Positions 17,762 to 51,953 are shown, counted from the stretch's first letter. The stretch: 64,000 bases of DNA from Botryllus schlosseri (GCA_051294905.1 CM119379.1:22382001-22446000); one strand, 5' to 3'. Notes: generated from the letters alone by a model not told the origin. Made by a program: numbers and translations.

Positions 17762-18259
17762 TTGACAATGTCAGAAGCTACGTCTATGACCGATGGTGGT
17801 CAGTCGTATTCTCTATTATTTGAGATTACGGTCGCTATTGGAACTACTATTTTAGCGGCGTTTCTGTGTAACAATAGACGGAGAAAGTCTGCGGCTTCCA
17901 CCGGTAGGTCGGATGAGCTTGACTCTGAGAACGAACTAAAAAGCAGTGATGACGACAAAGGAGAAATTCCAGATGTCTCTAGAAAGGAAGAGAAACCTCT
18001 ACTCTCTGACACAAAAGAAATCGAATTAGGCGGACAAAATAAGAAACCCGAGTCCGTCTCAACACAAACGGAATTATCCCCAATCGAAGAGCGAATCATC
18101 TGGAAAGCCATACTCGTCGATCCGTTTGAAAGTTCGAAGCTACGCTACAAATCGGAACTATACATCGACGTCGATGGTACCATTACTCGGACTGAGTCAT
18201 TTCAGCGCGAAGGACTGGTCGGGGTTGGCATGAAACAAATATTGGCAAAATTACAATGA
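17762..18259 (+). CDS. Intronless 165-aa protein: N-terminal TM/signal-anchor, acidic linker, unknown C-terminal domain
   Basis: Open ATG..TGA reading frame. Hydrophobic LLFEITVAIGTTILAAFLC is followed by NNRRRK (positive-inside rule). The C-terminal YKSELYIDVDGTITRTESF motif is shared with the last exon at 48317-48545. Confidence 0.75.
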   Translation: MTMSEATSMTDGGQSYSLLFEITVAIGTTILAAFLCNNRRRKSAASTGRSDELDSENELKSSDDDKGEIPDVSRKEEKPLLSDTKEIELGGQNKKPESVSTQTELSPIEERIIWKAILVDPFESSKLRYKSELYIDVDGTITRTESFQREGLVGVGMKQILAKLQ

Positions 18260-20966: not shown

Positions 20967-21195
20967 GTGCATAATAGTCCCGCAACCGCGGGGAGTTGGA
21001 TTCAATTCTGCACATCATGCGTATGACCGAGGGGCGAAGAAAATTCCAAGTTGGATCCATCTGCTCAAAAATACGCCACCTTATGTTAATTTACGAAAAA
21101 ATTTACGGGGGACATGGCCTCTTTGCCCCTTGCTACGCCTTTGTTCTAATCGACTCAAACTATCGTGTGCTACTCTTTGCCGATTTCTGCTACAG

Positions 21196-24100: not shown

Positions 24101-24484
24101 GAACACAACCCAGACACCATGTTTGAATGGCCGAACACGCCCCAGACACGATGTCCTATTGGCAGCACAGGCCGAACACACCCCAGACATGATGTCCAAA
24201 CACGTCCCCGACACGATATCCGATTGGCAACACAGGCCGAACACGCCCCAGACACCATGTTTGAATGGCAATAGCACAGGCTGAACACGCCCCAGACATG
24301 ATGTCCGAACTCGCCGCAGACACGATGTCCGAGTGTCAACACAGGCCGACACGCCCCAGACATAATGTCTGAATGGCAGCACATACCGAACACGTCCCAG
24401 TCACGATGTGCGATTGGCAACACAGTCACAACACCCCCCCCCCAGACACGATGTTAACAAGGTTGGTCATGTTTGAAATACGGT
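21196..24484 (+). repeat. Left arm: 21-bp minisatellite (ATGTTTGAAATAAGGATAGTC) blocks, 24-bp CCGAACACGCCCCAGACACGATGT units with ~17-bp linkers, and ~420-bp higher-order units
   Basis: Direct reading; higher-order units restart after poly-C tracts near 22510, 22925, 23345 and 23775. Confidence 0.9.
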
Positions 24485-24744
24485 CCTTGTCAAATGAGCC
24501 CAGCGGCAAACACAGGCGACCCGCAATAAATGCAAGGGACATTAGTATTGGCCGAACTCATACATTAACTTTGAAACCCCAATTTAACAATACCGATCTT
24601 GATCGAAAGCTATTCCGGAAATACAATTTTAAAGATGGCAGGTCAACGGAACCACCCAGAAATATAGCCGTCCAAGTCTGAAATCTGAAAATCGGCATTG
24701 TTCCTAATGATCGCTCGATAAAATTCCCATTATCCTGGTCAATT

Positions 24745-30642: not shown

Positions 30643-32030
30643 TTCCTCGATTTCTGCGCAATTTTGACACAAACTCAGGTTGAGCTCTGGAAGTTACGTT
30701 TTTTAATACGGTCCGAATTGTCCGTAATTACAACATCATATACGATTCCTCGTAAAATTAAATCAATAATGGCGTGGATGGTCAATGGTCATTGACACAT
30801 TGGTCATTGCTTGATAGGCCTATAGGGGCCGACTATTACGTACGTGCACCGTGGATATCTCTGTGTAGCCTACTTCTTCGTAGCTAATGCTAGTGCCCGG
30901 CCATCGTCTCCAAATCCTTATTTCCGAGATTGTTAGTGGTCACCATCAAAACGTCACTGAGTATAGTGTAGCCTCGCATTTCGGCTATAGCAAATCAGCC
31001 AACTCAGTGTTCTTCACGATGTCGCTTGCAGTCTGAACTGCAATAGCACCTCATCAATGACAAATGTATCAATCAGCAGCGTACTTCGCATGAGATCTTT
31101 AAAAAGCAGAGCCAGTCGTAGCGCGGCAGTGCTATTTTCGCAATTCGCCCTCCACAAGTTCTACGCTTGCTCATCAAATTCTCACATTTGAAGAATTTTG
31201 TCGGAAGTGTAAAGTGCGACGCGATGGAGTGTAGTCTCTCCGGTCGGCAATAATTTCGAGCTCTCTGACGTATCGTGTTAGCGCTGTTAGAATATCAGCT
31301 ATTCGACTTGAGAACTCCAGTCAGAAAAAGTATGGACTCGACAATTCCGGTAAGTAGAAAAATCGATCAAGCTTATTTATTATACTAGTTCGTGATATTG
31401 TGTTACTGCCTTATGGCATGATGGTTGATAGATTGATAGATAGATTGATAGTTGCGTCGACTTAATACAGAGTCAAGTTTCCAACTCTTCGAATTGATTG
31501 CGACAGCTATACCGATAACTGATATGACCGTTTGGTGTTCAAATGCTGTTTCTTCCCGCAAACCTGGTCCAGTAGTATTGGTCTCCATTTTGACTAAACA
31601 GTAAATGAGACATCTCATCGTTATGGGTAAAACGCAACGAACATTTCAAAACAACACGCCCGTTCGTAGCCTGCCTAATATTACGCATAGGCCCCTCCCT
31701 ACTTGTTCACTATTCAGTGGCATTATGACGGTTGAAGAAATCCTAGCACAATAACCATCTCTAAGCCCAAATACACAATATTACGAATGGATAGTCCGCT
31801 CACGATGCTCATGAACACTTACAGGCAAGGAAATTCAATAGGCTGAAGATATGAAACCGCTAAATATTTTGATTTCTTTATCCAAATTTACGCCAATGAC
31901 AAATTGCGTGGTGCTGCGATTGACGCTTTTGGATCATTGGTCGAGACAACCGATAATTTGTGTATCATTATATATGTATACGATGTGAACTAAAACAAAG
32001 GTATGAGAATTGAGATTGAAGGCCAGAAAC

Positions 32031-33300: not shown

Positions 33301-33495
33301 AAGCACCGACTGTGTAGGTGGTCGCAAGGACTTGCATGACAAGCTGTGTAGTGCGGATCTTGATTCGAGTCGGTATTACAGTTTCTGTCGTAACTAACGA
33401 CGACCTTGAGCTATGCTGCAAATCAGTAATCCGTAGACGTCTTATCTTCTCAGACACATACTGACGAGGGAGTGGAGAGGGAAGAGATTTTTGTT

Positions 33496-36400
33496 ATGAC
33501 TCAGACAGAAGTGACAAACATCACGGAAGAAAATACGACCGTGGAACAACCTGTAGCTATTGCAACTGAGCCACCAGTTACTATGGAACAGTTCCTTGAG
33601 GGTCATTACGATGACGAGCGTTTGCCCTCATCCGCTGACAAAGTGGACGAATTGCCTACCGCCGAAGACGAAACTGCAGGTGTAAACGAATTGGACGATA
33701 CATCGAAAGTAACTTCAGTTGAAGAGGACAACGATGACGCTAATTTTACTTCGGTGAAAATCTACAGATTTCTGTTTGGGTATGTCATCAACTCCGCAGT
33801 TTTGAAACAGAACAATACACCGCTCAGAAACTTACTTGCTTATTCTTGATAATGTACACACAGTTACTGGTGAACTGCGGTCAACTATTGACCATTATGT
33901 ATTGCGATTATAATCACTAACAATTCACGAAATCAAGATAATGGAGTCGACCTCTAGGGTGAGTCCGAAGAAAATTTAGATTTCATCGAGATGGGTGAAT
34001 TAAAAATAGTCGGAAGCCTTTTCACATCCGAACCTTGTTCAAGAATTCAGCTTCAAATCCAAGTTCAAATGACATTTCTGAATTCATTTTGTATTTCGTG
34101 CATCTATTATCTATGTTAAATTTGGGGATGTGCAGTAGGGCTGTTCAAAAATAACTTTTTTCTTCGGATTCCAGCCATTCACTGATTAAATTGTCAGGTT
34201 ACCCTAAGAAACTCTGCACACCAAATTTGGTTCGATTCCATCAAGTATAGGACTCCGCAGATCCAATTAAAATTTTTAATTTATTATGGAAAATTAAAAA
34301 AAAAAATTCCCAATTTTCCTGCCAACCCCATGAAATTGTTGAGCTGTCTTCAGAGACGTTGCAAAACAAATTTGAGTCAATTCCGACCAGTAGAAGCGGA
34401 GTTATGTGAGTTTTTCGTTGATAAATCGCGGATTATCCACCAATCAAGGATAATCCGAGAAATTTCAACGAAAAACTCCAATAACTACGCTTCTACTGGT
34501 TGGAATTGACTCAAATTTGTTTTGCAACGTCTTTGAAGACAGCTCAACAATTTCACGGGGTTGGCAGAAAAATTTGGAAATTTTTTTTTTTAATTTTCCA
34601 TAATAAATAAAAAAATTTAATTGGATCTGCGGAGGCCTTCACTGGTTGGAATCGAGTGAAATTTGGTGAGCAAGGTTTTCTACTGCAACCTGACGATTTA
34701 AGAGGTGACCGGCTTGAATCGGGAAAAAAAAGTTATTTTTGAACAGCCCTAATGTGCAGCCTGAAAATAGACTTCTGCCGCTCGATACCATGTCATATCT
34801 TTTTAATCTATCGCCAGTGGCTCGATGAAGGACAAGGAAACGATTTCTGCAGACGAATACGACGACGAGGTACAAGATGGCGAAGAAAAAATTTCCTCCG
34901 TCGATCCCGATCCGCCTCGTGATATATCGGAGCCTACAGAGTCGTAAGTAACTTTATCGATAGTCAGTGCTAATCTGCTAAAACGTTAACCTGACAATCT
35001 ATACGAAATCTGTTTATCCTGTAAAATTCCGATATTGTACTCAGGGAAAAAACAGAGGAGGTGTTAGAGAAGATACCGGCCGCGGAAAATGAAAACATCG
35101 AATCTGCAAATGATACCTCTCCGTCCCTAACAGGAAGATTTCTTAACATTTTCAAAAGAGGGTGTGTGAATAATATTTATAACACACTGTATCATGAAGG
35201 CTGTATCATGAAGTAATCCTTACGAGCTCCCGTCATTTCTATTCTTGCATCGAACGATTGCTATGAATCTGAGAACGAATTAAAATCCCGCGCTGTCGGC
35301 CCGTTCTATCATTTCCTACGATATTCTTGTCTTAGAACTACCGAAGGCGACCAGGAAAGAAAATTAGACGACGAGGCAATCGAAGATACTCCAGCCGATC
35401 GTCGCAAATCACTCGAAAATCGGTGAGTTTCCTACATAACGATCGACATACTATAATGTAGCTGCATATCAATTTCTACAAACCTCTATACGCATTATGG
35501 TGTGTCTATAAATAACCAATGATATATACACCATTGATATAACTGACTTAATTTACCTCGCCTTTGAAGCAGCAGTGGCGATGAAAAGCTGTTTTAAAGC
35601 AGTGGAAGTTGCTAACTTCAACGCCCATGCTAGCGATATCCCGGAGGCGGAACTATAACCATCAACGCCAACGCGACACACTTTATCCACAATATCGTGT
35701 TAGTTATTATTACAAGCAAACGCGCATGTAAATTACATGAAGTGCAACTTATTCGACAGTGAAAATATATTGCATTCAGCAAACTCATCTTTAATAACAT
35801 TCATGCAAAACGATATCCGTAGATTTGCATAAATCACTTTGTGCAATTGCACATTTACAGGGAATCGGAAATTCTAGTCGAGTACGAAACGGCACAGGAT
35901 GAAAACGACGAAAAAGAGTCAGCAGAAAACCTACCAATTCTTCTTGCTGGAAAGTTTAGGAATATATTTCAGACGAGGCAGTATGTTTTCGTCTTCTCCT
36001 TCGTTCTCTCACGTGTGCTTGATTACAGATGCACTGTAAAAAATCTGGTAGATTTACTGGGAAATCTCTCTAAATTTTACCACGAATTACCGGTCGCAGC
36101 CAATTACTGTGCGTAGCTTGTCATTTTACATTTTGATTTGTAATATTACCTTAATATAGCTGTAAAGTAAGTTACCAGAATTTCTTCGCAAAATTACTGA
36201 CAGTTACTTGTTACTGCAGTTTACCGGGCTATTGGCAAAATTGATTAGCATCAAAATCGCTGCAGCCAATGTATACGTAGAACTGAATGTTACTGATATA
36301 TCATTCTAGAGGTGATTTGACCTGATTGAACCTCGTTTGCGAGACTGGGGTCTGTCATACCGAAATTGTTGGCCCTAGTATCAATTTAAGCTTAGTAGGG

Positions 36401-39400
36401 TACAAGAAATAACTGACAATCGTAGCTAATGTGTTATACCGTAGCCATGTTATATTATAAGTAGAGCCCGACCGATTATCGGCTCGCCGATAATATCGAG
36501 TCGATATCACGCTTGGAGAGAAATATCGGTATCGGCCATTGAAGGTAAAAAAATATCGGCCATTTCGTGACGTCACAACATGGTGGCAGAGAGTCAAGAG
36601 AAGTCGATAAAAGACGTGAGAGCGGTCAATTATAAAAATAAATGGCCAAGCTGCATATAGTGCATACAGCATAGTGCATACAGGGTAGTAGGCGTGTCAA
36701 TCTGAAAAATATTATCGATAACTAACCCCCGTTATGCCCCACTGACTTCGTGGGAATCCCCCTGCAGTAATCGATCACCAAAGACAGAGAGCAGCTGGAT
36801 GGATAGTTGTCTGCAGAAGATTTCAATCAGTAAGAGAAATGAGAACTTCAATCATGCTGGACTGACCCTCGTAATGATAGAGAAAAGCGTCGCGTCGAAA
36901 CATTTCCCGGTTCGGTACCAACAGAGCTAATTATACCAGTAATGTATGAAGTCATCTGACTGAGGCCTGCGGCTGCGGCCTGCGGGGCCACCATGATAGG
37001 AAATATGCGAGCATAGAGGGCAAGAAAATCAAGCAAACGTGGAGTGAAGCCAATAATTGATACAAAAATTTTTGATTCCGTGATGACATTGGCCAATTCT
37101 GACAAAAGAGTGTAAAATATTGATCAATTGATTGTTGAAATGCTGGTCAAGGCCCATGGGGGATGGGTGGAGCAGTTGCAGACGTGGACAATTTGAGTTG
37201 TTTTGCACATTCTTCAGCTATTTGTTAATGATGTGCTGAAGGCTCCAGGTGCATTGTCAGAAGAATATCAATATCAATATTTGGCTAAACCATTGAAGGA
37301 AAGATCCCCTGCAAGGGAGCGGTGGAACCGAAATGAAGAAAGATTTCCTGCTGTGCCACTAACTATGCTACCTAGTGAAAGACTGCTCACTGTGTTTAGT
37401 ACTATACACATCATCTATGGAAGACCACAGAAGTTCACTCCTTGGAGAAAGGGCCGAGAAATTGTGCTTCGTGAACTGTAATCTGCAACTGCTGGATTGG
37501 TGCTTTTGATACATTTTGATAGTTCCTTGATCATTTATTTCATGTTCAAGCAAATCAATGGCTGTAAAGTTGTTGAAAGAAATGCTCTTGAGGTGTTAAA
37601 TATGGGCCTTGAGCTAGATTCCATATATTTTGAATATCGGCTGAATATATCGGGGTTATCGGTGGAGGTACTGGATATCGGTCTTATCGGTATCGGCTCA
37701 GAAATCCAATATCGGTCGGGCTCTAATTATAAGGCAATGGCTGTACGCCGTACGGCCAGTCTCGCTGGTTACATTCGTTGTCACGGATAAGGCTGATAAG
37801 TTAGAAAATTAGTTCAGGATGTATAATATTGCTCGGGGAAACTAGAAATATCAGCACCGAATGCTCAGCTGACCATTTGTTAATGGCGGACAAGGCGACC
37901 TGTAATAGGTTACATTAGGTGACTGCTTTTTCTGAGATTCGTAGTAAACAACCAACGCACAACTGTGACATCACAAGCAGCGTCTGGTTAGGTAAGTACA
38001 GTAAGTAGTGAACAACACATGGAATATATATCAATTTATACGAAATTAGATGAAAAAAGGGACTATGTGCAATGCTAAATGTTTCTGTATGGAAAAAACG
38101 ACCCAGATCAAACATTATAACGTGGCCAGTAAATATTATTGGTGTCATGTGTCAGCGGATGAATACCATTTATTTCGAAATCGTTCGAGTGTCGTCTGGC
38201 CAGTGGTCATTAGTGAGATTTGAGCAAAGGGTGGAGCGAAGCTTGTTGTGCTTGAAGAAAGTGGACGCGACCGTTGAAGATTCCTAGGAATGCTGAATGG
38301 AATACGCATCTTAAAAGGTAATACAGTACTACATAGTATTTGTTACCGTGAATATCTGACTCTGCACACCAGCCCTCGATGACTTAGATTTCATGATTGA
38401 AATATTTCGTTCGCCGCATTCTCTGTTCTATTTTGGGATATTTGTCGACTTATATAGTGACCACATACTCCGCTGCGGAGGAGTTGAAACTGTTGGCTTG
38501 GTAATGTCATTTTCGGGCCATAGCATAGATATGTTTTCATCCACTGCTGGATTTGTTTGCCACACAAGCCACCTTAAATTAGGAACCTTTTGCGTCAATA
38601 CAGAGATAAAGTCTGAATCTCTGCTATGTCGTGTAAAAGGCGGAGCCGTCATCACACAATGTGCCAGTACCGGTACTTCAAAACATGTTATATTTTTGTT
38701 AGCCCATTTGTCTTAGTCTTTATAATGTCATGTCCACTGTCCAGGTTAGGAACTTTGCTTTATATAGCGACTTACGCATGAATTCTTTTTAGTGGAACTG
38801 CAAGATACTACTTACACAGAAGGAATGAGAACGAGAAAAAGAAACAATTGGAAGTTTGGCCGGTGGTGGAATTAATTCACGTTTTCTTGAGACCACTCGT
38901 GTTACTGCATGTCTTCTAAAGAAGAATTAGACCTCCAGCAGCAATATTTTTCCATCGATAACCACTTCATCGTAATATCATGAATGAATATACAGTTTGT
39001 TCCAATGTCGTTTTGGGGATGTGAAGAAATTGTTGCGATATTTTTGCATCGGGTTGCTTTGCGATAGGTATGGATGTACGTGAATTTACAAGCTGGTATG
39101 TAATCGTGATTTACAGGGACAGCATGTAGGTAGGTAGGCGGTAACATGACAGTCTCGATCGCAAATGTACAGTAGAACATGTAGATTAGATATACTGGAG
39201 GTGACTGTAACATTACAGTCTGGCGTGTAAAGTGAGATTACCGGACGAGTGTAAGTTAAATTTACATTGACTAACGGTAATGTTAGATTACCACGAAATG
39301 TCTGGCTACCGTGCTTCCAAACATTTCGCGGTAAATCGAGGTTTTTATTTTTTACAGTGTGGCTCATAGAATTTATAATCTGAACTATTCGGTTTAGAGA

Positions 39401-42400
39401 TGACGAAAAAGAGGACCATTCTTTATCACAATCTACTCAAGATGTTGAAGTGGAGATCGCTGCAGCATCGCGGCAGCAAGAATTAGACGATGGGTGAGGA
39501 CAATCTATATAACATTTACACAAATTGCGAAGCATGACTCGGTAACTTCTTTCAGACACCACGAGACGGGAGATGAGGACGAGGTTGAACTTCTGGGCGC
39601 AGCAAAAACTTTTCCAGTGTACGTGGGTTCCGAGATTCGAATTTATCATGAATCATAATTTATAGAACTATAATGAGCTTCATAACGCGTTTGCAAATGT
39701 AGCGATAGCGTAGTCGATGTTTGTTGGCTAGTAGATGAAGTAAAGAACAGTAACCCATATAGCATTATTAACTAGGCAGAAAGACACAATAAATGTGTTG
39801 CAGGGATATCAGCAGCGGGCGATATGACGGGAATGAAAGCAAATCAGAAGTCGTCGATGAGATTTCGGAAACGATAGTTGTTGGTGTAGAGTCCATTCCG
39901 CAACAACTGGAAGAATACCGGACTGACAAAGATACACAAATATCGTCACCAGAAGAATACTCGGTCGCAGAAAAAATAATGATATTTGAGACACCGAGAA
40001 AGTAACTAAATATAATAATCATTAATGCATGGATTTTTCATATCCTTCATTTTCCTTCTCACCTTTTTAATCACCATAATAATTTTGTTAAGTGAGGATG
40101 ATACAGACCGAGCTTCTGTAACCGAAGAAATAGATAATGAGATAGCTGCAGCATCTTCACGGACTGAAAGAGACAATGATTATAAGTAATCTATTGCTGA
40201 CTGCATATGTCACGGCTATCGTGCTTTTACCAAATTTACTTAATAAAGAAACACCAGTGAAACCGAGGAGCCGCAGTCTGCCGGAGCAATTGAATACCTT
40301 CCGATGCTCATCGCATCTAAGTTGAGGAATGTATTCACTAGGAAGTATGCGTTACATATATACACATGAAATTAATCATCGTATATATTCAAGCTTATTA
40401 TAATATGCACAGTGCTGCTGCTGATGATGATGATGATGAAACCATGACTGCGGAAGAAATTGTGACTGACCCCGACCGCGAGATTGACACTGCATCACCC
40501 CAGGACCTTGCTGATTATAAGTATGGAATAGAATTTATACTTTTTCACGATTCCGTGTTCATAGGGCTGGGCACAATGATTCGAGTACTCGAATCTGAAT
40601 CGAATATTAACTTTAATGATTCGAGTCGAGTATAGTAGAAGATGTTTTTTTCGAGTACTGAAATTATACGCTTCTCGCCACTAAAAGTTAATTTATCAAC
40701 GAGAATTATAGTTTCACTGTTGAAGCCATGAAACCTTGATTGGCGGTATCGTAGCCTACCAAATATATATATTACAAAGATAGAATAGCGTATACTAAGG
40801 TTACTGGACGTAGCACATTCCTGAAGTCATGATTATCCCGTGACATTGTCACCAAGTGGTCGGAAAGATACCAAAGTCTCATTTATGAGATGGATAACAG
40901 ACATTATATTCTATGTATTGGCAGAAACGGTACATATTTGAACTTTGACGTATTACATTCTGTTGTGACGTCATAATGGGTGATACTCGATTACTCGACA
41001 TGACTCGAAGCATATTACGTGATTCAGAATCGAATCATTCAGGTATTCGATTTTGCCCAGCCCTATACTTGTTCATTATCTAGTATATACCGTCGTCTGC
41101 TCATATGCAGCTCTTGTAAGTTCGATATTATTCATGCTTTCGATTCTTAACGCTACGATTATGTCCGTCACTCGCACAGGCATCGTTATTCCACATGTCG
41201 TTTAGTGTAATCAAATTCAATTCAAAGGTGCGTGCATATGCTTGTTTTAAAATAAAAGTGTGAATTTCATAAATATCGTTGTTCATGCCTAAAATTGTCG
41301 AATACCTGCTAAATGTCGTATGAAAAGGTTTGATACCAGTCGAGTAATGGGCTATATAGGGGCTGGGGTGCAACGAAACCTTGTTTCAGTGATTGCTACT
41401 CATAGATGACACACAAAAATCATGGCGGCGTCTAAAAATTCTAGATATCATTGCAAAATTCGGGCACTTTCTGCGCACGGCCACGCATGTTCATTGTTCA
41501 TGGAGATAACATTCCATTCTATTGGTAAGCGTGTGCAAAATTGTCGTGATGCCTCATGCCAAACTTTTGGGCTGGCAACAATATCAGAAAGACAGATAGA
41601 TTTATTGTTTAGTTTCAGACCATAAGCGAAGAACAAAAATAACAAAGTGAAACGTATTTATAGGCTGCACCGAAGTGAGTGCATGCTCAGTCCCAAAGTC
41701 TGACCCTGCCTTGAGATAACAGAAATTCAATAATAGGTTTAGCAAGTCTTTTTCAATATGGTTTCAACTGAGATTCGGCGATCTTTACGTTATAGCGACG
41801 ACAATCAAGATTCCAATCAACCTGAAGCGACTGTGACAGAAGGAATCTCCGAGCCTAAGGTTGCCGCCGTACAAAATGAGCCAGAGGAAGTGTCGTTGAC
41901 CACAGCTGAGTATGCTGAAAACGATCTGTCAATTACACGCTCGTAATAGACAATTATTATCTGACAGTGACAGCGATAGAGTACGGGAATCTGTTTCGGA
42001 ATCACCGAAACAAAAAGTACCAGAAGTTGGTATCGCAGAAAGAATTATAGGATTCCTCCGACCCAAGCGGTGAGTTGTTTCGTTAACACGCAGTGTTTAA
42101 GTATCCTCCCAATATCTTGCTGACACACATTATAAACGAAAAATATTATTGATCCCAAATGCGATCTCTATGCAAAACATCTTATTCAGATTTGGAAAAG
42201 ATGAAAGGTTAGACGCTGAAAACGCCGGAACTACAGAATTCGGCAGCCGTTACAGTGATGAGTCACAAGAAGAAAGACTCCATGGCATGTCAGTAGAGAA
42301 GCGACTCGTGGTCATTATAATTCTAACATAACGATGAAGAAGAAAATAGCGCTTATAAATCCATATATAATATAAATATATATGTCACTGGGCGCATGAA

Positions 42401-45400
42401 TAATGACACTAAATCCGAAAAATGGCGATGACATTATCATATCCGCGTTATACGCATTATTACTTCATAGTAATTAAGTAGAAAACGTTGCCAATGGTGG
42501 TCTCATAGCGAGTGCATTATAATTTATAGTAGCTAATGCTCATCCAAACTATTTTGTTCTTAGTGAGGAAGAATCTAAAGATGCCGATACAGAACAAAAC
42601 GACTTGATAGTCAGCGAGGAAATCACGGAGACAACAGCCACGGTGGTTGAGTCTCAATATCAGGAAGAGCTTCCAGACGAGAGCGAGTATGGAATGCGCG
42701 AAACGGTCGATCCAACGGCGAAACCGTCGTCAAATTTGGCAGATAGAATCAGGGAGTTTCTACAACCAAAGAGGTGAGTGGAACGCGAGAATAAACGTAG
42801 GCCTATATCGATTCTTCGTTGCTACCGATAGGGCGTCGCGGTCAATTACTGGGCCGAGAATAAGAAAATATGCATATCACGGAGTTGTAGCACATGTAGG
42901 GCTATGTTTACAGACATAGACTTGCTGCTGCTAAATCCCTCAGCTATATAATTTTCAATCGACTATAATTCTTAATTTTCTTTCATGGAGTGGCGATGGT
43001 ACAGACGAAGAAAATGCCTTACGTCCAATCCAAAACAGAGCTAGAGCTTATTACATCCGAAATTGCTACGAATTTATTCAATAAATTTATACAGAGACCA
43101 GAGTTCCCAAGAAGAAACTGTTTCTCAAGCGACTGATGATGCGTCTTCATCCCAGTCGCAACATGAAGAGCCTGATCAATCGTAAGATTATGTTATGTCA
43201 AAATATTCTATGAGTGCTTACAAAAATAATTGATCTACTCACATCACGCCGTCCTAATATTGCCCTAGTTTCCGCCGAGCCCAATCCAAAAGTTGATCGG
43301 CTTACTACTACTTACTACTACTATAAGGAAACTTTTATGTTATCGCCGAAGGTAACTGAACTATTTTTAGACTTGCGACATCAGAAATTGGACAGGAGAC
43401 GGAATCCCTTTATCGGACAGATAACAATGACAGCTCTACAAGCGATTCGTTTGATATTGGAAGAAAGATTCGAAATTTCTTTCAACCGGGGCGGTAAGTG
43501 GTTTAGGCCTGATAGATGCAAATTATCGCTATCCAGCGTATAGTACAGTTCCAGTTGTACATTAAGGTTGCATTTAAAACAAAAATCATTCTAAAACAAA
43601 CATGTTCAAAACAAAGCCCTTGTTTAAAACATGATTTTTATGTTTTTGTTTTCACCATCACGTCAATAATGTTGAATTGTGACGCCACAGTGGATTGACA
43701 TTGACAATGTACAAAATATAGGGTGAATATGACTCATTGACGAAAAAGACTTCTGGCCCCCATAGTTAAACGGACCAAAAATATCTCTCGCCAGGACTAC
43801 TTCGTTATGCAGCATTTTTACGATCGTCGGTCATTTTCATCAGGGCACTCATTCCGTACCAATGATCTATAACTATACGTGCTATAACTGTTGAACCGAC
43901 GACGATTTCGAGGGTTCCAACCGTTCCATATCATATACGTCGACTCTATTGGATGGAAATGGTCCGTAGGCTCTAACTACGTGTTTTTTCGAATGCATTT
44001 ACACAATTCTGGCATAATTTTACAAATTTTGAAAAAAAAACTTTTTTAATTTTTTTTTTATTACAAACAAAGTGTTTTATATGAAACCGTATGTACAATC
44101 ATGTATAGGTACAGTACAGTGTACAAATGACTTCGCGAATTCAGAAGAGGATTGACAAAAGATGGTACCTGTAACCCTCACTAGCCTACAACGACACTAT
44201 AGCTGAAATAATATCGTTCATAGTTATTCTTCCGGAAATGCAATAGGGTATTTCCGTGCCGCAGCGATCTGCGTAGTCACAGCTATAGTACCGACGCCTT
44301 CATATACGTGCTCTGGTGGTGATTCCGGATTCAAAATGATCTGAACATGCCACCAAAACAGTGGATACGAAATGGATCGGCGTTACTGAGATTAAGAAAG
44401 CGGTTATACAACGACCTTGGCAAGAGCCACCTTTGATATCTTCAGCGATATTCTTAATACACACTTTACATAGGCATATGGTAACGACCAGGCAGTAATA
44501 GGACTTGACAGCGACATATAGGCTCTGCCTAACAATATATTACAATAGCGCTTTTGAAGAATTCGCTTTGACAATCAAATCAATTGGTATTCTATTCTTA
44601 AAGAACAAAAAAGGATTTATCCGTATCACTTGACCAAGAAATCAAAACGGACGCTCGTACAGCAAACCAGCCGCCCGAAAGGTATAGATTTCTCTATATA
44701 GTTGAATATCATATTCATGCGCACCATCATAGTATAGTCGTAGAGATATAGCAGAGCTATTATAATAGCTTCCAGATGTCTCAAGTAGGCCTGCCAGGAT
44801 TCTCACTATGCTTTGTTTTGAAATCTAATACGTGCGCTCGATTGACGCACACCTCTGATTTGAAACGATCTATTTCTACAATTCACACCGAATAAGTATA
44901 TTGTGTAGGGAATCCGGCCATATCGCTGACGATAACATGGAGTCAGGGGAGAACCTTCATATATTTTTGGCAGAAAAGCTCGTGGAACGGTAATAGTTCC
45001 TTCATGCAATAAGTTTGACGCATGTGATTTATTTGTAACGAAACTTCATGTGCTATCAGTCTCAGCGAGGAAGAATTGGATTCGGAAGAAAATGCAGAGC
45101 CACAGAAGCAGATTGTAAGTGAAGGACAACTGGAAGCGAAAAGAGTACAATCTACCCTTCCTGAAGACTCACGCGATGAATTGTGAGACACTTCATCAGT
45201 TATAGGTTATTGGTAAAGCACCAACAACGTCTTTGGTGAGCCTTCCAACCGTGTCTATATCTAATATGTTTGAGATTACCACTGCATGTTATCCGCATGT
45301 CCTGCATGTGATCCGAAATTACATTGCGTCTTTTATCTCCAGGGTACTAATGGAAAACAGAACCGAGGTGAATATGGACTATACAGAAGATCCAAATGAA

Positions 45401-48400
45401 CTAAGGGATGCTTCCGATAGCCTCGACGCGTTTCTGCAGGAAGACCTTAATCAACATACGAGGTGGATGATTTTCTACTCTCTCTGACAGCGTTTGATTA
45501 TTATATATAGGCGCACTCTTCACTCATTTTCCATTGGGAAAATAGATACCAATTGAAAATTATAAAAGTGTGATACAAAGGGTTTCGTTGTACGCACGCA
45601 TGTGCTATCTCAGAGATGAGCGATATTTTCAAATCCGGTTCCGGAATTGAGATTGCAATCCACCTCCTAATTCTAATCCCCAGAATACTTTCAAATCATG
45701 TCCAAATCCGCGACTATAGTGACTAAAGTAGGGTTACCATATGTCCACCTTTAGGAGGATTTGTCCTCCTTTTTCAGGAAATCGAAAATCCCCTCTATTT
45801 TGAGAATTCGCCTTCCCTTATAGCTTTGACAGCCAGATTGCTAGACAGGCACAACTAAAAAACGCCATAAACGACGCGAAACATATAATGTGATGCTCCA
45901 GCTGGACTTTCGGGAGTAGAACTTGAAAACTGACCTTTTTTAGTCAACACAAGAGGCTTTCCCGTAAAAAATTTAGAATCAGCAGTTTTCTAGTTCTAGT
46001 CCGTTGAACTAAATTTTATGCTTTGTGAAAGTGTCCTCCGTTCCGGTTCCCAAATTATGGTAACCCTAACTAAAGTATATTCAACAATCGCATGAAAATT
46101 GGAAGCTTTTGGGAGTTCTAGGTCCAACTGCTACTTCAGGAGCGTCGTAAATCAAAATCCCGCCAAGTTCTTCAAATCGAAATCCAAACCAATCCTCATA
46201 CAACTATAATGACCAGTTTGAGCCATTTTATTTTAGCTGATTTACGAGCAGGCCGATCTAGCTGAAATATATCGTCCTCGGGATTGGCGTTAACCACTGC
46301 TCTAGGCGTGTTGTATGGTAACATGAGGTGAATCACTTGATGAGCTAATAATAATGTCGCATGAAACTACTCTGCTTTCGCACTTTGTATAGATCATGAC
46401 TATATAAATTATTATTCAACTTCGCAGAGACCAACACCAAGAGAGTGATTGTACAGGGTTCGCGATTCGCAATTATGATCAAGGGTCAATTCCTTGCCAA
46501 TTTATTTAGTCGTGTCAAAAGAATTACGGATCATAAATTATAAATAAATTCATCTCGGAGGCGCTTTCAACTGTCTTCTTTGTTATTGCTTATTCAGTTA
46601 CGAACAAGGGTTTACTGAGGAGGATGGCGATGACACGAAACGGGAGGAAATCATTTCTGAAACCAAAGTGAAAGCAGTGGAGTCGCAGACGAATGACATG
46701 CCAGAAATTCAGTAAATTTGCAGGGATTTCGGTTAATTTTTTGATTGTATAATCCTGCTGTTTTCGCTTGAGCAGCAACGAAGAATCGCCTTTCGATGAC
46801 CAATCGGAGAAATCCAAGTCATCGCGTCTACCTGGAATCCTAGCCTCAGCATTCAAAGGATTCTTTCAGTCGAATAGGTTTCATTTTTATATTCAATTTA
46901 CTGCTCATTGGATTTATAGTTATTGCGCAAATTGAGCGCATATATCCGCTCTAAGCTCTGAAATGACGGTCACGCAATATCTTGGTTTCTTGTACCTGCT
47001 GGGACCGCGGCCTAATTGCGTATAATTGCGTTAGGCAAATAAATTTCAAACGTTACAGTATTCTTTTCTGATATCAAAATTGGTGACCCCGATTATACAA
47101 TTTATGTTTGACAGTGACGAAACCCCAGTAGATGAAACTGGAGAATCAGCATTATCCACTTCGGTTGATATGGAAGAGCAAGTAGAAATGGCTCACGTAT
47201 CCTCTGTGGAATCTGGTCCGCCGGCATCCTCACATGAGTAAGTGCATTGTGGGTTCTACTATTCCGCGATATATGAAAGAGTACATACTTTCAGCATGGT
47301 GGAAGATTCATCTGGCCGAGAAGCAATTGCAGACAAAATCGAAGAAAAAGAAACTGCCGAAAATCTTCCTCTGTATCTCGCAGCCAGGATGAAGAAGTTA
47401 TTGGAGCCTTCAAAGTAACTTCAAATTTAGAACAGCTGTTCATGGTCCAATTATTATTGATTTGGTTGCGGATAATGTAGAATCTGAAACGCCTATGGAA
47501 GGATTCACATATTTGTGACTTTAATATATCTATTTGCTGTCTGAGCCTGTTTCCCTGTTTATGGTAAAAGTACATTTTTGATGACGTTGTAGTGTAAAAC
47601 AGCCCATGTCCTTTGAACTTTTTTACGTGCGTAATGTTGTATATATTTCCGACTGTTGACCCTTTACATCATTGTGCTGCAGCAAAAGCAAGGAAGACAC
47701 GACCGTGGTATCAGACGAACAGGAATCATTGCAAGAAGACCTAGAAAAGGACATCTCTTATGTTGATCAACCGGAAACTTCACATCGACAATTGTATGTG
47801 TATCTGTAGTGGTATGGATATCAGACTAATGAAAAGTGATGTTCTCACACAGAGATTCAGTGAATAATAGATCCGAGAGCATATCAGGAAATGAAGCAGC
47901 ATCGGTGGATGAAGAAAAAGAAACCGCTGAAAACCTACCGATTTACCTTGCGAACAGATTAAAAGGGTTCCTGCGGCCCACACGGTTCGGACGCCGATAA
48001 ATTAATTTATTTATTCGTATCTCTGATCGCTATATCTATTCTATACCTCAGTCGGTCTAATAATATATTTCCGCGGGAAATAGTTCAATTAGGGAAGTTA
48101 TTTTGTAATACGCTTCATACGCTTCCATCGATGTGCATTGTGTATTTAGTCATTTAAGCGTTCGTTAATAATATGGATTAGTTGGAGAGTTATTTAATTT
48201 CTCCACCCAATTACCAATGCTTCCAGGTATTTATTATAAATTATACGCGCGCTTTATATCACTATATATATCATGTGTAACACTAATCGACGACATTAAT
48301 CAGAACTGTTTTTCAGTCCCGAACAAAACATGCACGACTGTCCGTTATGCGGCCAAAAGGTATCCGAGGATGCGTTCAAAGATATAGAAATGAATAGCAA

Positions 48401-48545
48401 TGACGGGAAGTTGTGGAAGGTGCGTGGAGTGAACCTGAAATGCAATCTTGTTTCGGAAATTCGTGGAGGAGTCTACAAGACTGAGATTCGCATCGCTGCT
48501 GACGGAACAAGATCGATGGCAGAATCCTATTATAAATTGGTGTAG
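33496..48545 (+). CDS. Large acidic, intrinsically disordered protein (~1080+ aa) built from symmetric exons, ending in an unknown small domain
   Basis: Exons: 33454(ATG 33496)-33779, 34818-34943, 35045-35161, 35336-35422, 35861-35980, 39398-39493, 39556-39618, 39804-40001, 40093-40185, 40249-40344, 40413-40520, 41796-41909, 41968-42069, 42190-42288, 42564-42773, 43095-43181, 44604-44681, 45066-45182, 45343-45462, 46598-46711, 46776-46877, 47115-47237, 47295-47414, 47683-47793, 47853-47984, 48317-48545. All have AG/GT boundaries, are stop-free and D/E/S/T-rich. The true N-terminus is uncertain and extra exons may have been missed. Confidence 0.8.
34136..34751. mobile_element. hAT-like palindromic MITE (TAGGGCTGTTCAAAAAT family, copy 1)
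   Basis: TIR TAGGGCTGTTCAAAAATAAC / GTTATTTTTGAACAGCCCTA; perfect 8-bp TSD ATGTGCAG; long internal inverted arms. Confidence 0.92.
36462..37725 (+). mobile_element. Internally deleted hAT transposon with transposase remnants
   Basis: 15-bp TIR TAGAGCCCGACCGAT / ATCGGTCGGGCTCTA; perfect TSD ATTATAAG; frameshifted CFA(H)ILQLFVNDVLK (~37199-37240) and DPL..WNRNEERFP...PSER.L..FS (~37303-37400). Confidence 0.88.
40562..41065. mobile_element. MITE, TAGGGCTGGGC family (copy 2)
   Basis: Perfect 11-bp TIR TAGGGCTGGGC / GCCCAGCCCTA; homologous to 8713-9181; TSD unclear. Confidence 0.82.
45729..46068. mobile_element. hAT-like MITE, TAGGGTTACCAT family (copy 3)
   Basis: Ends TAGGGTTACCAT / ATGGTAACCCTA; ACTAAAGT occurs at both junctions (offset by 1 nt on the left); shares CTTTAGGAGGATTTGTCCTCC with the 19077 copy. 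Confidence 0.85.
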
Positions 48546-49531: not shown

Positions 49532-51953
49532 GTATAGAAATTAATCATCATTGATTTTACCTTGTATATTTTATGTTGTTCTCTCTATGTATGATGATGC
49601 GGTTACCGATGTTAACCAAATCCTTACACGATGTCTGCCGTTCAGGCATAGATTCATTCGATGATTTCTGGATGTTCTGCTATCGTATAGTTCTAGGATC
49701 AGTCGAATTTGAATCGCGACCATCTGCTGCCGAAACACTCAAAGTTATCCTCGAGTCGTCCATACAGGGTAAATTTGTTATCCTGCAAAATTAAGTATTG
49801 CTATATTTTCCCTAATATATACGATGTATTCAAACGTTGTATTTACGCTATACACCCACCCTCTCTTAAACCTTTGTTGCCTATATAATAATCTCAGCGA
49901 CTAGGCATTTTTTAGATAACGATAGTGTCGAATTATAGTATTTGAAAATTGACAAAACAATTGCGATAGGCTATCTATAGTATGTAATCTATTCAAATAT
50001 TTCGCTCGGATAATACTACGAAACAGGCGTGGCCTTCAATATACCATGAGTTTGTAAACAATATTACAAGTATAATTGTATATAATAGCCTGTGATAGGA
50101 ATATAAAGACTAATAAAAATGTCTGTGAGAGTAATTTCTGCGTCTGCCCTGTCTAAATCGATCGATTAGATACAAATCATTGTATATGCTCATGGTTATA
50201 GTCAGGTTGACTCCTTTAAAAAGAGTGTGGGCTGGCTATGGGATATGTTGGGTTCTACGTAAGGACTGAGGACTGCTCCAAAGCATGAATATGTATAGTT
50301 TTCACGTTTTCGCCACCTGATGCGATTAATGCCTAAATTGAAAAGGGAACGCTGGTAAGTCAGGGGGATAAGCGTTGGTTGGGATAATTAACAGCTATGT
50401 AGACCAACAACCATTACTTGACATATTTATTGGTACATATGAATTTATCCGAGACATACATAGTATCAAGTCACAGGAAGTATGGTTTCTAATTTGTGTG
50501 AGCATTGTGCAGTGTGCACACAACTCAATGGGCACTGATTGTATCAAACCTTGATCATGTAGGCTACGGAGGACATTTCATACCTCAAACCATCGAATTC
50601 CTAACCGGAAAGATCGAGTGAATTACGCCGACCTGCAAATCACATGCAGGTCTATGAATGGCATAACCCTTTATTAAAGCAATAGAAACAATAAAATGAA
50701 ACGAAAACTAGTTTATAGTATTCGAATAAAAGGATATATTGAAAATAATACTCCATATCGTATGTGATTATCGCAGAATTTTTCAAATTCTTATTTCAAA
50801 GAGAAGTCTGAATTAACTTGAAGCCATAAGTATCCGAGATCAGTAAACCTGCGTAATAAGGAGCAAGACATCGAGGCAGATTTCTACCTATAGGTGAATG
50901 TGCGACACGGGTTTCGATTGACCTAAATTGATATCATGATTGGCTTCTATCACCTCTACGCAAACATAGAACTTCATTCCTTAAAAGTTAGAACATGTTG
51001 ATCTAATGTTTGCTCTGTACCAGATTAGAATCGATGATCATCTCACCACCACTATCTTTGGATTTCGAATGCGGCGCAGGTCTGAAATATTGTGGTGTTC
51101 GTGTTAAAAATAGGCTCTGATGCAAGTTACGGGTAGACAGGCTCTCGCAGTAGTGATTCTTGTGTATGTTGCGATTGATCACGTTTTCTGTCAATTTACA
51201 TCTCAATCGTCGCAATCAACAATTCTGGTAAGCAAGAGATTTTGGGACAAATAAGTCTCCATTGAATTATCTCTCTTTCTCTATCCCACCATTACGTAAA
51301 TATAGTCACTAGTAGGCGATTGGACTTCGCTAGTCGCTACGCTATCACAACAACGCTTTGCTACGATGCAGGTTATGGTTGGTTTTCGCCAGGCTCTGGA
51401 ACCTGCAACTGGAAGTATTCTTGAGGAATTCAATTATGTTCCGGGGAATAGCTAAACAGGAATGCTAATGGTAGAAGGGATAGATAATCTTTGAATCTAA
51501 TCGAATTATCGCCTTCACCAAAGCACGGCATAGTAATTACAGTAGGCCTACAATAGCATTACAGTGCCACTGTGGCTGTGATCGCATTTCTATAGAGTTG
51601 ATGGTGAAAGTGAATATCACTACATATGCAAGGTAAAAACTCGTGTCCGATGAATCGAACTGATTTGCATTGAATAAATTGAGTAGTTTCCGGAAACAGT
51701 AAGATCCAAGAAGCAAGAATAGAGATTGAAATTGTCTTGCGCTCGATGTTACAAATTATCCCTTAATTTCAGTCCGCAATGTCTGCGATTTGGGCCTAAA
51801 CTTCCGCATGGTTTGCCATTTTGTGTCGGTGGCTCTTTCTTTCTGACAATGATGAATGTACTGGAATATCTAAAATCTAGTTAGTTTATATGCGTAACCC
51901 TGTTCCAACGAGCCCATGGAATTATCCTACCATACTACTCACCATACTTTCAG

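What the first reader, a model, noticed from the sequence alone, without database searches (positions are those of the whole stretch)
33740..47984. Basic amphipathic helix motif repeated about nine times, always at an exon's 3' end
Seen at exon ends: TSVKIYRFLFG (33779, weak), SPSLTGRFLNIFKRG (35161), ENLPILLAGKFRNIFQTR (35980), EYLPMLIASKLRNVFTRK (40344), VPEVGIAERIIGFLRPKR (42069), KPSSNLADRIREFLQPKR (42773), RLPGILASAFKGFFQSNR (46877), ENLPLYLAARMKKLLEPSK (47414), ENLPIYLANRLKGFLRPTR (47984). Consensus is roughly LPxx[LI]Ax[RK][hydrophobic]xx[FIVL][FL]xxx[RK]. In much of the gene these exons alternate with purely acidic exons. Inference: a multivalent docking motif (AKAP-like or calmodulin-like helix) or a membrane-binding helix strung on an acidic disordered chain.
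Basis: partly seen in the sequence, partly recalled or inferred. Interest (0 to 1): 0.7.

Follow-up and report, generated by a model that had tools for sequence, protein, structure and literature searches.

The report
Acidic disordered protein with repeated helix
An expressed gene with no detectable relatives, in what looks like an amphioxus genome, encodes a very acidic, floppy protein of about 1,100 residues. About ten to twelve of its small exons each end in the same short, conserved amphipathic helix, which probably acts as a repeated docking site; the partner is unknown.

Summary
All nine peptides sit on the + strand, and each ends exactly at a GT donor. Three more copies exist, at exon ends 40001, 43493 and 44989. 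RNA contigs and reads confirm the splice joints from 42 to 48 kb.

The array is 27 exons long: a phase 0-to-2 entry exon, 25 exons of phase 2-2, and a phase 2-to-0 exit exon. It translates without a stop into about 1,050 acidic residues (pI 4.1). The motifs are the main hydrophobic islands in this chain.

Core motif: L-P-x-x-[LIV]-[AG]-x-[RK]-[LIFM]-x-[GN]-[FIV]-[FL]-x-P-x-[RK]. AlphaFold2 models it as a 11-13-residue helix. A nine-residue core pattern occurs 8 times against 0.011 expected.

The motif is unique to this locus in the 495-Mb genome. It has no match in Pfam or PDB, and only one ORF fragment from a relative matched among 1.84 billion proteins. Two fragments from a relative, and the polymorphisms, show the motif conserved while the acidic flanks drift.

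Most likely it is a multivalent helix-docking array built by exon duplication. AKAP, IQ, BH3, PIP, MIM1 and dileucine patterns fail. Membrane binding remains a rival. The gene ends and the function are unresolved.

The parts
31332..31349 (+). candidate first coding exon MDSTIP, phase-0 donor CCG|gtaagt (unverified)
   Evidence: ATG with A at -3 and G at +4, followed by a consensus donor. No RNA evidence. No signal-peptide-like exon found in 30.66-33.45 kb.
33454..33779 (+). entry exon (phase 0 to 2), acidic; weak motif copy m1 TSVKIYRFLF at 33748-33779
   Evidence: Strong acceptor tcttatcttctcag| at 33453. Open frame and GT donor. m1 is not recovered by the leave-one-out profile.
34818..34943 (+). 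acidic spacer exon, phase 2-2, 126 nt
   Evidence: Splice signals and open frame; part of the stop-free 27-exon model.
35045..35161 (+). motif exon m2, SPSLTGRFLNIFKR at 35118-35161
   Evidence: Leave-one-out score 10.9, above every non-copy.
35336..35422 (+). acidic spacer exon, 87 nt
35861..35980 (+). motif exon m3, ENLPILLAGKFRNIFQTR at 35925-35980
   Evidence: Leave-one-out score 33 bits. One of the two best window matches of the relative's fragment P0001; it ties with m9.
39398..39493 (+). acidic spacer exon, 96 nt
39556..39618 (+). acidic spacer exon, 63 nt
39816..40001 (+). motif exon mB, EEYSVAEKIMIFETPR at 39952-40001; acceptor could be 39804, 39813 or 39816
   Evidence: The relative's ORF P0002 is identical over the last 25 residues. 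Not recovered by the leave-one-out profile.
40093..40185 (+). acidic spacer exon, 93 nt
40258..40344 (+). motif exon m4, EYLPMLIASKLRNVFTR at 40292-40344; acceptor 40249 or 40258
   Evidence: Leave-one-out score 14.4.
40413..40520 (+). acidic spacer exon, 108 nt
41796..41909 (+). acidic spacer exon, 114 nt
41950..42069 (+). motif exon m5, VPEVGIAERIIGFLRPK at 42017-42069
   Evidence: Donor joint 42069 to 42564 seen in three runs.
42190..42288 (+). optional acidic cassette exon, 99 nt
   Evidence: A contig of run X3 has it spliced at both ends, while joints in X1-X3 skip it.
42564..42773 (+). motif exon m6, KPSSNLADRIREFLQPK at 42721-42773
   Evidence: RNA joints on both sides. AlphaFold2 gives helix SNLADRIREFL; pLDDT averages 86 over the exon's last nine residues, which include most of it; the rest is coil.
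43095..43181 (+). acidic spacer exon, 87 nt
   Evidence: RNA joints.
43371..43493 (+). motif exon mC, SFDIGRKIRNFFQPG at 43447-43493 (new copy)
   Evidence: RNA joints; leave-one-out score 14.9.
44604..44681 (+). spacer exon, 78 nt
   Evidence: RNA joints.
44909..44989 (+). motif exon mA, truncated copy ENLHIFLAEKLVE at 44949-44989 (new copy)
   Evidence: RNA joints. Weak in the leave-one-out search, 6.2 bits.
45060..45182 (+). acidic spacer exon, 123 nt
   Evidence: RNA joints.
45343..45462 (+). acidic spacer exon, 120 nt; contains an acidic amphipathic stretch DSLDAFLQEDL
   Evidence: RNA joints.
46598..46711 (+). acidic spacer exon, 114 nt
   Evidence: RNA joints.
46776..46877 (+). motif exon m7, RLPGILASAFKGFFQSN at 46825-46877
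   Evidence: RNA joints. Weak in the leave-one-out search, 5.9 bits.
47115..47237 (+). acidic spacer exon, 123 nt
   Evidence: RNA joints; acceptor checked.
47295..47414 (+). motif exon m8, ENLPLYLAARMKKLLEPS at 47359-47414
   Evidence: RNA joints; leave-one-out score 14.8.
47683..47793 (+). acidic spacer exon, 111 nt
   Evidence: joint 47793 to about 47853 in run X1.
47853..47984 (+). motif exon m9, ENLPIYLANRLKGFLRPT at 47929-47984
   Evidence: RNA; acceptor cacag| checked; leave-one-out score 37.9 bits. AlphaFold2 gives helix LPIYLANRLKGFL at pLDDT 83-87.
48317..48419 (+). exit exon (phase 2 to 0), PEQNMHDCPLCGQKVSEDAFKDIEMNSNDGKLWK. The frame also stays open to a stop at 48543, so this could be the last exon.
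   Evidence: An X1 contig runs from 47984 into 48317. Best donor is TGGAAG|gtgcgt at 48419. No Pfam family above threshold.

Best explanation
This is most likely a stand-alone gene, roughly 31.3 to 48.5-50.9 kb on the + strand. It encodes a strongly acidic, intrinsically disordered protein of about 1,100-1,200 residues.

Shown: it is built from about 27 small exons that share one reading phase. Spacer exons encode only acidic, Ser/Thr-rich chain. Ten to twelve module exons encode acidic chain followed, at their last 15-18 codons, by one conserved motif: L-P-x-x-[LIV]-[AG]-x-[RK]-[LIFM]-x-[GN]-[FIV]-[FL]-x-P-x-[RK]. The motif is predicted to form a short helix of 11-13 residues, often bounded by prolines. 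The L before P and positions 3, 7, 10 and 11 form one hydrophobic face. The small residue lies at its edge, and Arg/Lys flank it on both sides.

Inferred: the array grew by tandem duplication of phase-2 exons, which is why the motif always lies at an exon's 3' end. The shared phase lets copy number change by duplication, loss or exon skipping without breaking the frame. Each helix is a fold-upon-binding docking element for one and the same partner surface, most likely a groove on a folded protein. The acidic spacers, 58-148 residues between cores, keep the chain expanded and soluble. The protein would thus act as a multivalent scaffold or sink that binds many copies of its partner, or binds one oligomeric partner with avidity. 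The partner is unknown.
For: Gene structure: the nine peptides plus three more all end at GT donors. GT..AG joints in spliced contigs of three runs and in raw RNA reads cover 42069 to 48317. The 27-exon concatenation of 3,366 nt has no stop.

Disorder and helix: 26% Asp+Glu and pI 4.1. Ten of the 14 hydrophobic islands are motif copies. AlphaFold2 puts a confident helix only on the motif, in both subfamilies.

Non-randomness: the core pattern occurs 8 times against 0.011 expected. Eight copies are recovered by leave-one-out profiles.

Selection: in RNA contigs of the same species the flanks carry 22 nonsynonymous and 10 synonymous differences. The nine-residue cores, together with the Pro of the preceding LP, carry 0 nonsynonymous and 3 synonymous differences. 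A relative's ORF P0002 is identical over the last 25 residues of exon mB but has 8 substitutions and a one-residue gap upstream. P0001, from the same sample, keeps every consensus position (ENLPAYLAGRFRGIFKPK) while its flank diverges. A neighbouring protein is only 54% identical between the two genomes.

Stereospecific features that favour a protein partner: Ala at position 4 in 9 of 12 copies and Gly in one more, Gly/Asn at position 9 in 7 of 12, and fixed Pro boundaries.

Uniqueness: a six-frame profile search of the 495-Mb genome finds only these 12 sites.
Against: No partner is known and no binding was tested. The motif matches no curated family: Pfam, PDB sequences, 1.84 billion representative proteins. 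The selection evidence is thin: three core polymorphisms, my own Fisher estimate about 0.04, and two fragments from one unnamed sample. AlphaFold2 readily draws helices for short peptides. The charge layout (basic at the polar/non-polar boundary, acidic in mid-polar face in four copies) is equally typical of lipid-binding class A helices. The 5' and 3' ends of the gene are not fixed by RNA, so the cellular compartment is inferred only from the lack of a signal peptide.
Confidence: 0.42

Rival explanations
1. The helices bind membranes or lipids. Each copy would be a short class-A-type amphipathic helix that lies on a lipid surface. Twelve weak binders on one chain would give avidity, much as the K-segments of acidic plant dehydrins do.
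For: Basic residues at positions 6 and 8 sit at the edges of the hydrophobic face, and Asp/Glu at position 5 lies in the polar face in four copies (helical geometry is my own calculation). Core hydrophobicity is 0.3-0.84 and hydrophobic moment 0.4-0.6. The HeliQuest-type discriminant is 0.76-1.38 for 8 copies, the 'possible lipid binder' range; formula and thresholds are from memory. m6 NLADRIREFLQP resembles the canonical K-segment EKKGIMDKIKEKLPG (PMC5415607) and the LL-37 core KRIVQRIKDFLR.
Against: The helix has only 11-13 residues and is often bounded by prolines, which is short for a surface-bound helix. The chain carries about 175 net negative charges, which should be repelled by anionic cytosolic membranes. 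The conserved Ala/Gly at position 4 and Gly/Asn at position 9 are not needed for lipid binding. Pfam Dehydrin does not match.
Confidence: 0.22
2. The array is not a separate gene. It is the N-terminal cytoplasmic tail of the giant coiled-coil FN3-MAM-MAM-lectin protein that starts 2.7 kb downstream. The hydrophobic segment at 51.14 kb would then serve as a type II membrane anchor, and the helices would be docking sites for adaptors or the cytoskeleton.
For: The exit exon ends in phase 0 at a good donor, 48419. An AG at 51112-51113 would open an exon in phase 0 reading ALMQVTGRQ-ALAVVILVYVAIDHVFCQF, with Lys/Arg on the N-terminal side. The downstream rod is heavily glycosylated and ends in FN3, two MAM domains and a C-type lectin domain.
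Against: That acceptor is weak, scoring 2.8 against 3.2 or more for most of the array's predicted acceptors. In-frame stops lie 3 and 5 codons upstream of the Met. The exon MQVTGR..STIL|gtaag is conserved, with its Met and about 200 bp of upstream DNA, in the tandem paralogue. The paralogue starts right after this rod gene ends and has no acidic array before it. The motif profile finds no second array in the genome.
Confidence: 0.12
3. The helices are 'stickers' for self-association. Hydrophobic/basic helices would bind each other or the acidic spacers, so the protein condenses or gels (sticker-and-spacer behaviour) with no outside partner.
For: Hydrophobic/basic islands recur at broadly regular intervals in a long acidic chain. 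The blocks carry opposite charge.
Against: Position-specific conservation (Pro, Ala/Gly, Gly/Asn) goes beyond what generic stickers need. The huge net negative charge argues against self-coacervation without a polycation.
Confidence: 0.1
4. The protein is a secreted polyprotein, cut after each motif to release cationic amphipathic peptides whose charge is masked by acidic propieces, as in host-defence peptide precursors.
For: The motifs end near basic residues: RPKR, QPKR, RPTR, FKRG, QPGR. Copy mC has a weak Pfam match to the cathelicidin CAP18 C-terminal peptide, E = 0.29, and the cores resemble KR-12.
Against: No signal peptide exon was found upstream. Only one strict furin site is present. 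There are no consistent cleavage sites on the N-terminal side of the helices. Several copies (m7, m8) lack a terminal basic residue.
Confidence: 0.05

Closest known systems
Plant dehydrins (group 2 LEA proteins), K-segments, especially acidic SKn types
   Same: Both are disordered proteins with several copies of a roughly 15-residue segment that forms an amphipathic helix with basic residues. In both, the segment ends at a Pro and is separated by polar or acidic stretches. The run I-x-D-[KR]-I-[KR]-E-x-L..P is shared between the consensus EKKGIMDKIKEKLPG (PMC5415607) and copy m6.
   Different: There is no Pfam Dehydrin match. Our motif has 2-3 basic residues instead of 5-6 Lys, and is far more hydrophobic (Phe/Leu pair, Leu-Pro cap). 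It is an animal gene with one repeat per exon. The likeness covers about 9 residues and may be convergence or chance.
Calpastatin
   Same: From my own knowledge: an intracellular disordered protein made of repeated units, encoded by many small exons, whose short helix-forming subdomains dock onto a folded partner (the calmodulin-like domains of calpain).
   Different: From my own knowledge, calpastatin's helices are acidic and it has the TIPPxY inhibitory motif. Nothing like that occurs here, and no sequence similarity was detected.
Cathelicidin LL-37 core (KR-12, KRIVQRIKDFLR)
   Same: Both share the pattern hydrophobic-small/x-x-R-I-[KR]-[DE]-F-L and form a cationic amphipathic helix. Copy mC has a weak Pfam CAP18_C match, E = 0.29.
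   Different: The match is below threshold. There is no cathelin domain, no signal peptide, and no processing sites on both sides. The helices are embedded in a 1,000-residue acidic chain.
AKAP RII-binding helices, IQ/calmodulin-binding motifs and ESCRT-III MIM1 helices
   Same: All are short amphipathic helices used as docking elements. The spacing L-x-x-[RK]-hydrophobic-x-x-hydrophobic of MIM1 fits 9 of 12 copies.
   Different: The AKAP pattern fits 1 of 12 copies, IQ 0 of 12, and strict MIM1 0 of 12. The helix is shorter than an RII-binding helix.

Membership tests
AKAP (PKA RII-binding amphipathic helix) | A helix of 14-18 residues fitting [AVLISE]xx[AVLIF][AVLI]xx[AVLI][AVLIF]xx[AVLISE] (pattern recalled from memory) | tested here: not met
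   The pattern fits 1 of 12 copies, m5 only. The predicted helix has 11-13 residues and is Pro-bounded in most copies.
AKAP (PKA RII-binding amphipathic helix) | Binds the RII dimerisation/docking domain | not testable with these tools
   No binding assay is available; an RII overlay would be needed.
IQ calmodulin-binding motif (Pfam PF00612) | [FILV]Qxxx[RK]Gxxx[RK]xx[FILVWY] | tested here: not met
   No regex matches. No Pfam IQ hit even at E up to 10. Only the fragment hydrophobic-xxxx-[RK]-G is present, in 3 copies.
Classical basic calmodulin-binding helices (1-5-10, 1-8-14, 1-14) | Bulky hydrophobic anchors at the named spacings within a basic amphipathic helix of about 14-20 residues | tested here: inconclusive
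   1-5-10 fits 4 stretches in 3 copies and 1-8-14 fits none. Most 1-14 matches run out of the helix into the acidic flank. These patterns are permissive, and binding was not testable.
Dehydrin (Pfam PF00257) | At least one Lys-rich K-segment close to EKKGIMDKIKEKLPG (PMC5415607) | tested here: not met
   No Pfam Dehydrin match for seven motif exons at E up to 10. The copies have 2-3 basic residues and no KKG or KEKLPG.
Cathelicidin (CAP18_C, Pfam PF12153) | C-terminal cationic peptide after a cathelin prodomain and signal peptide | tested here: not met
   One copy scores 11.5 bits against a cut-off of 20.5. No cathelin domain or signal peptide was found.
ESCRT-III MIM1 (MIT-interacting motif) | [DE]xxLxxRLxxL[KR] at a protein's C-terminus (recalled from memory) | tested here: not met
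   The strict pattern gives 0 matches. The loose spacing fits 9 of 12 copies, but it is generic. The copies are internal, not C-terminal.
BH3 motif / PCNA PIP box / acidic dileucine signal | BH3: an invariant Gly/Ala-Asp after the third hydrophobic residue. PIP: Qxx[LIVM]xx[FY][FY]. Dileucine: [DE]xxxL[LIM]. | tested here: not met
   BH3 gives 0 matches and PIP gives 0. The dileucine pattern gives 3 matches in the protein, none inside a copy.

The most novel reading that the evidence does not exclude
The acidic array could be spliced onto the neighbouring giant rod-lectin gene by a 48419-to-51114 joint. That 5,000-residue glycosylated coiled coil, so far read as secreted, would then be a type II membrane receptor with a cytoplasmic tail of about 1,100 residues carrying twelve identical helix docking sites. 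No such architecture has been described.
Probability: 0.12. Interest if true: 0.75.

Novelty: new variant of a known kind. Interest (0 to 1): 0.42.

Why it matters
If the helices are true docking sites, this would be a new short linear motif with an unknown reader domain in a basal chordate. Short peptides should make it easy to fish for the partner.

The gene is also a clean natural example of how a multivalent disordered protein is built. One motif sits in each symmetric exon, spacer exons lie between them, and copy number can change without breaking the frame. Selection is visible on about 10 residues, while the acidic spacers drift almost neutrally.

If no partner exists, it is one more lineage-specific acidic repeat protein, and ordinary.

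Tried and rejected
1. Known families. Pfam on acidic and motif exons and on the last exon gave nothing above threshold. A PDB sequence search with the motif profile gave only a chance hit at E = 1.9. ESM Atlas look-ups of a rod exon and of the last exon were uninformative.

2. Homologues. The profile against 1.84 billion representative proteins returned only P0001. A word-indexed search with the entry-exon ORF found nothing. The same search with the exon alignment found only P0001 and P0002. Their contigs could not be fetched because the sample file is too large.

3. Self-association of four motif exons. Complex prediction gave no support (score 0.01). That is not evidence against binding.

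4. The ORF at 17768-18259 as exon 1 supplying a membrane anchor: rejected. Its orthologue P0003 is conserved right up to the same stop codon and lies beside the same caspase-like gene, so it is a separate single-exon gene.

5. A signal peptide or transmembrane exon between 30.66 and 33.45 kb: none convincing.

6. Completion of a Rad18-type CCHC zinc finger after CPLCGQKV in a downstream exon: not found.

7. Recent DNA-level duplication. Only a 29-nt match between exons m8 and m9 survives, so the copies are old.

8. Motif-like hits at 34.3 and 34.56 kb. They lie in an inverted repeat inside an intron and look like chance.

Full report
**Observation.** Each one ends one base into a GT dinucleotide. 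The exon ends are therefore 33779, 35161, 35980, 40344, 42069, 42773, 46877, 47414 and 47984, and each leaves two bases of a split codon.

When the sequences are lined up from the exon end, the copies fall into register. Three more copies turned up in the same position:
- YSVAEKIMIFETPR at exon end 40001
- FDIGRKIRNFFQPG at 43493
- a truncated ENLHIFLAEKLVE at 44989

**Transcription and gene model.** I laid contigs of three runs (X1-X3) and raw reads of one RNA run (X19) of the same organism on 42001-48000. They gave GT..AG joints for these exons:

| Exon | Note |
|---|---|
| 42564-42773 | |
| 43095-43181 | |
| 43371-43493 | |
| 44604-44681 | |
| 44909-44989 | |
| 45060-45182 | |
| 45343-45462 | |
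| 46598-46711 | |
| 46776-46877 | |
| 47115-47237 | |
| 47295-47414 | |
| 47683-47793 | |
| 47853-47984 | |
| 42190-42288 | cassette exon, included in some contigs and skipped in others |

One contig continues from 47984 into 48317.

Upstream of 42 kb I predicted exons from open frames, splice signals and phase. Joined together, 27 exons (3,366 nt) read through without a stop.
- The first of them, 33454-33779, has a strong acceptor and enters in phase 0.
- The next 25 are all phase 2-2 and multiples of three. This agrees with the scan's note s1-246890.
- The exon starting at 48317 has its best donor at 48419 and leaves in phase 0.

**The protein.** The array has 1,046 residues, 273 Asp+Glu against 98 Lys+Arg, and pI 4.1. 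It is rich in Ser and Thr and has no Pfam domain. Ten of its 14 hydrophobic islands are motif copies. The copies are 58-148 residues apart.

**The motif.** The consensus is L-P-x-x-[LIV]-[AG]-x-[RK]-[LIFM]-x-[GN]-[FIV]-[FL]-x-P-x-[RK]. There are two subfamilies. One starts with EKE[ST]AENLP (m3, m8, m9, and more loosely m4, m7 and mA). The other lacks the LP and reads like IAERIIGFLRPKR (m5, m6, mC, mB, m2).

Statistical checks:
- A nine-residue core pattern occurs 8 times in the array, always inside a copy, against 0.011 expected in shuffles. It occurs 11 times elsewhere in the 128,000-residue six-frame translation of the window.
- In leave-one-out profile searches, eight copies beat every non-copy. 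m7 and mA are weak, and mB and m1 are not recovered.

AlphaFold2, run with the copies as the alignment, models LPIYLANRLKGFL as a helix, with block-mean pLDDT of 83-87. For the other subfamily it models SNLADRIREFL as a helix (pLDDT averages 86 over the exon's last nine residues, which include most of the helix), with the acidic part as coil at 60-67. On a helical wheel (my own calculation), the Leu before Pro and positions 3, 7, 10 and 11 share one face. The small residue sits at its edge, and the basic residues at positions 6 and 8 flank it.

**Conservation.** In the RNA contigs the acidic parts carry 22 nonsynonymous and 10 synonymous differences from the assembly. The nine-residue cores, counted with the Pro of the preceding LP, carry none and three. 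The numbers are small.

The protein databases hold three ORF fragments from one sequencing sample of a related animal:
- P0003 is the orthologue of a neighbouring gene and is 54% identical.
- P0002 matches exon mB. It is identical over the last 25 residues, including the motif, but has 8 substitutions and a one-residue gap in the 44 residues before.
- P0001 ends ...EKESAENLPAYLAGRFRGIFKPKT. It keeps every consensus position while its flank diverges.

**Distribution.** A six-frame profile search of the whole 495-Mb assembly finds only these 12 sites; the next best hits have E = 1.2 and 7.4. Against 1.84 billion representative proteins only P0001 passes. I did not verify the species.

**Gene limits.**

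Upstream:
- The ORF at 17768-18259, which has an N-terminal transmembrane helix, is a separate single-exon gene. Its orthologue is conserved up to the same stop codon and lies beside the same caspase-like gene.
- A 9.5-kb minisatellite palindrome fills 21.2-30.66 kb (note s1-246879).
- Between it and the entry exon, the only attractive first coding exon is MDSTIP at 31332-31349, with a good start context and a consensus donor. It is unverified.
- No signal peptide exon was found there.

Downstream:
- From 51.1 kb to about 39 kb beyond the window lies a huge, heavily glycosylated coiled coil. It ends in FN3, two MAM domains and a C-type lectin domain. This is the rod-lectin of note s1-300844.
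- Its first coding exon is 51120-51227, MQVTGRQALAVVILVYVAIDHVFCQFTSQSSQSTIL|gtaag, a signal peptide with in-frame stops just upstream.
- This exon, its Met and about 200 bp before it are conserved in the tandem paralogue. The paralogue begins right after the first rod gene ends.

The simplest reading is therefore two genes, with the array gene ending between 48.42 and 50.9 kb. The frame of the 48317 exon also stays open to a stop at 48543. A splice from 48419 to a weak phase-0 acceptor at 51114 cannot be excluded, and I keep it as the novel case.

**Mechanism.**

Shown:
- a transcribed, exon-modular, acidic chain predicted to be disordered
- 10-12 conserved helical islands

Inferred:
- The islands are docking elements, and the array is multivalent.
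- I favour a protein partner, because the small residue at position 4, Gly/Asn at position 9 and the Pro boundaries are conserved. A helix of 11-13 residues on a chain with about 175 net negative charges is also a poor membrane binder.
- The charge layout and the likeness to dehydrin K-segments (PMC5415607) and to the LL-37 core keep lipid binding alive as the main rival.

The position at the exon's 3' end follows from descent by exon duplication. The copies are old: only 29 nt of DNA similarity survives, between m8 and m9.

**Comparison with known motifs.**

| Motif | Result |
|---|---|
| AKAP RII-binding pattern | 1 of 12 copies |
| IQ | 0 |
| strict MIM1 | 0 (loose spacing 9 of 12) |
| BH3 | 0 |
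| PIP box | 0 |
| acidic dileucine | 0 inside copies |
| strict furin site | 1 |

There is no Pfam Dehydrin hit, and the CAP18_C hit is below threshold. A co-folding test of four motif exons gave no support, which says nothing either way.

**Verdict.** This is a real, non-random, selectively maintained repeat in an expressed gene with no detectable relatives. The general design, an array of short helical motifs on a disordered chain, is familiar. The motif itself is new and its partner is unknown.

Noticed in passing
window 17768-18259 (+): A single-exon gene for a 163-residue protein: a short N-terminus, one transmembrane helix followed by NNRRRK, a divergent acidic middle and a conserved C-terminal 60 residues. 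The relative's orthologue P0003 (171 aa, 54% identical) ends at the same stop codon and lies beside the same caspase-like gene. No Pfam family.
   Followed up: partly
window 51120-51227 (+), and G000:C9 about 22,486,830 (window-extended 104.83 kb): The first coding exon (signal peptide MQVTGRQALAVVILVYVAIDHVFCQ...) of the giant coiled-coil FN3-MAM-MAM-lectin gene lies inside this window. Its tandem paralogue has the same exon. Homology between the two copies begins about 200 bp upstream of the ATG, which marks the edge of the duplicated unit.
   Followed up: partly
window 48332-48391 (+): The exit exon encodes CPLCGQKVSEDAFKDIEMNS. From memory, this follows the spacing of a Rad18-type CCHC zinc finger, but it has Ile and Ser where the last His and Cys should be. 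No Pfam family reaches threshold.
   Followed up: partly
window 42190-42288 (+): An acidic 99-nt cassette exon is included in some RNA contigs and skipped in others. This is direct evidence that the same-phase exons are alternatively spliced.
   Followed up: partly
window 34299-34326 (-) and 34560-34587 (+): An inverted repeat inside the intron after the entry exon translates into motif-like strings (VGRKIGNFF, LAEKFGNFF). It looks like a repeat element that mimics the core pattern by chance.
   Followed up: no
window 57069-57361 and 60431-60610 (+); also L014:2206-2424: Several introns of the rod gene hold copies of a short repeat whose translation reads ...KFGSIPTS...; probably a small interspersed element.
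   Followed up: no
window 42564-47237, acidic exons: RNA contigs of the same species differ from the assembly at many sites in the acidic exons, mostly nonsynonymous (22 against 10). These spacers seem to evolve almost neutrally at the sequence level while keeping their acidic composition.
   Followed up: partly
window 21181-30657: A minisatellite palindrome (units of 21, 24, 41, 65 and about 1,440 nt) ends about 0.7 kb upstream of the candidate first exon of the array gene.
   Followed up: no
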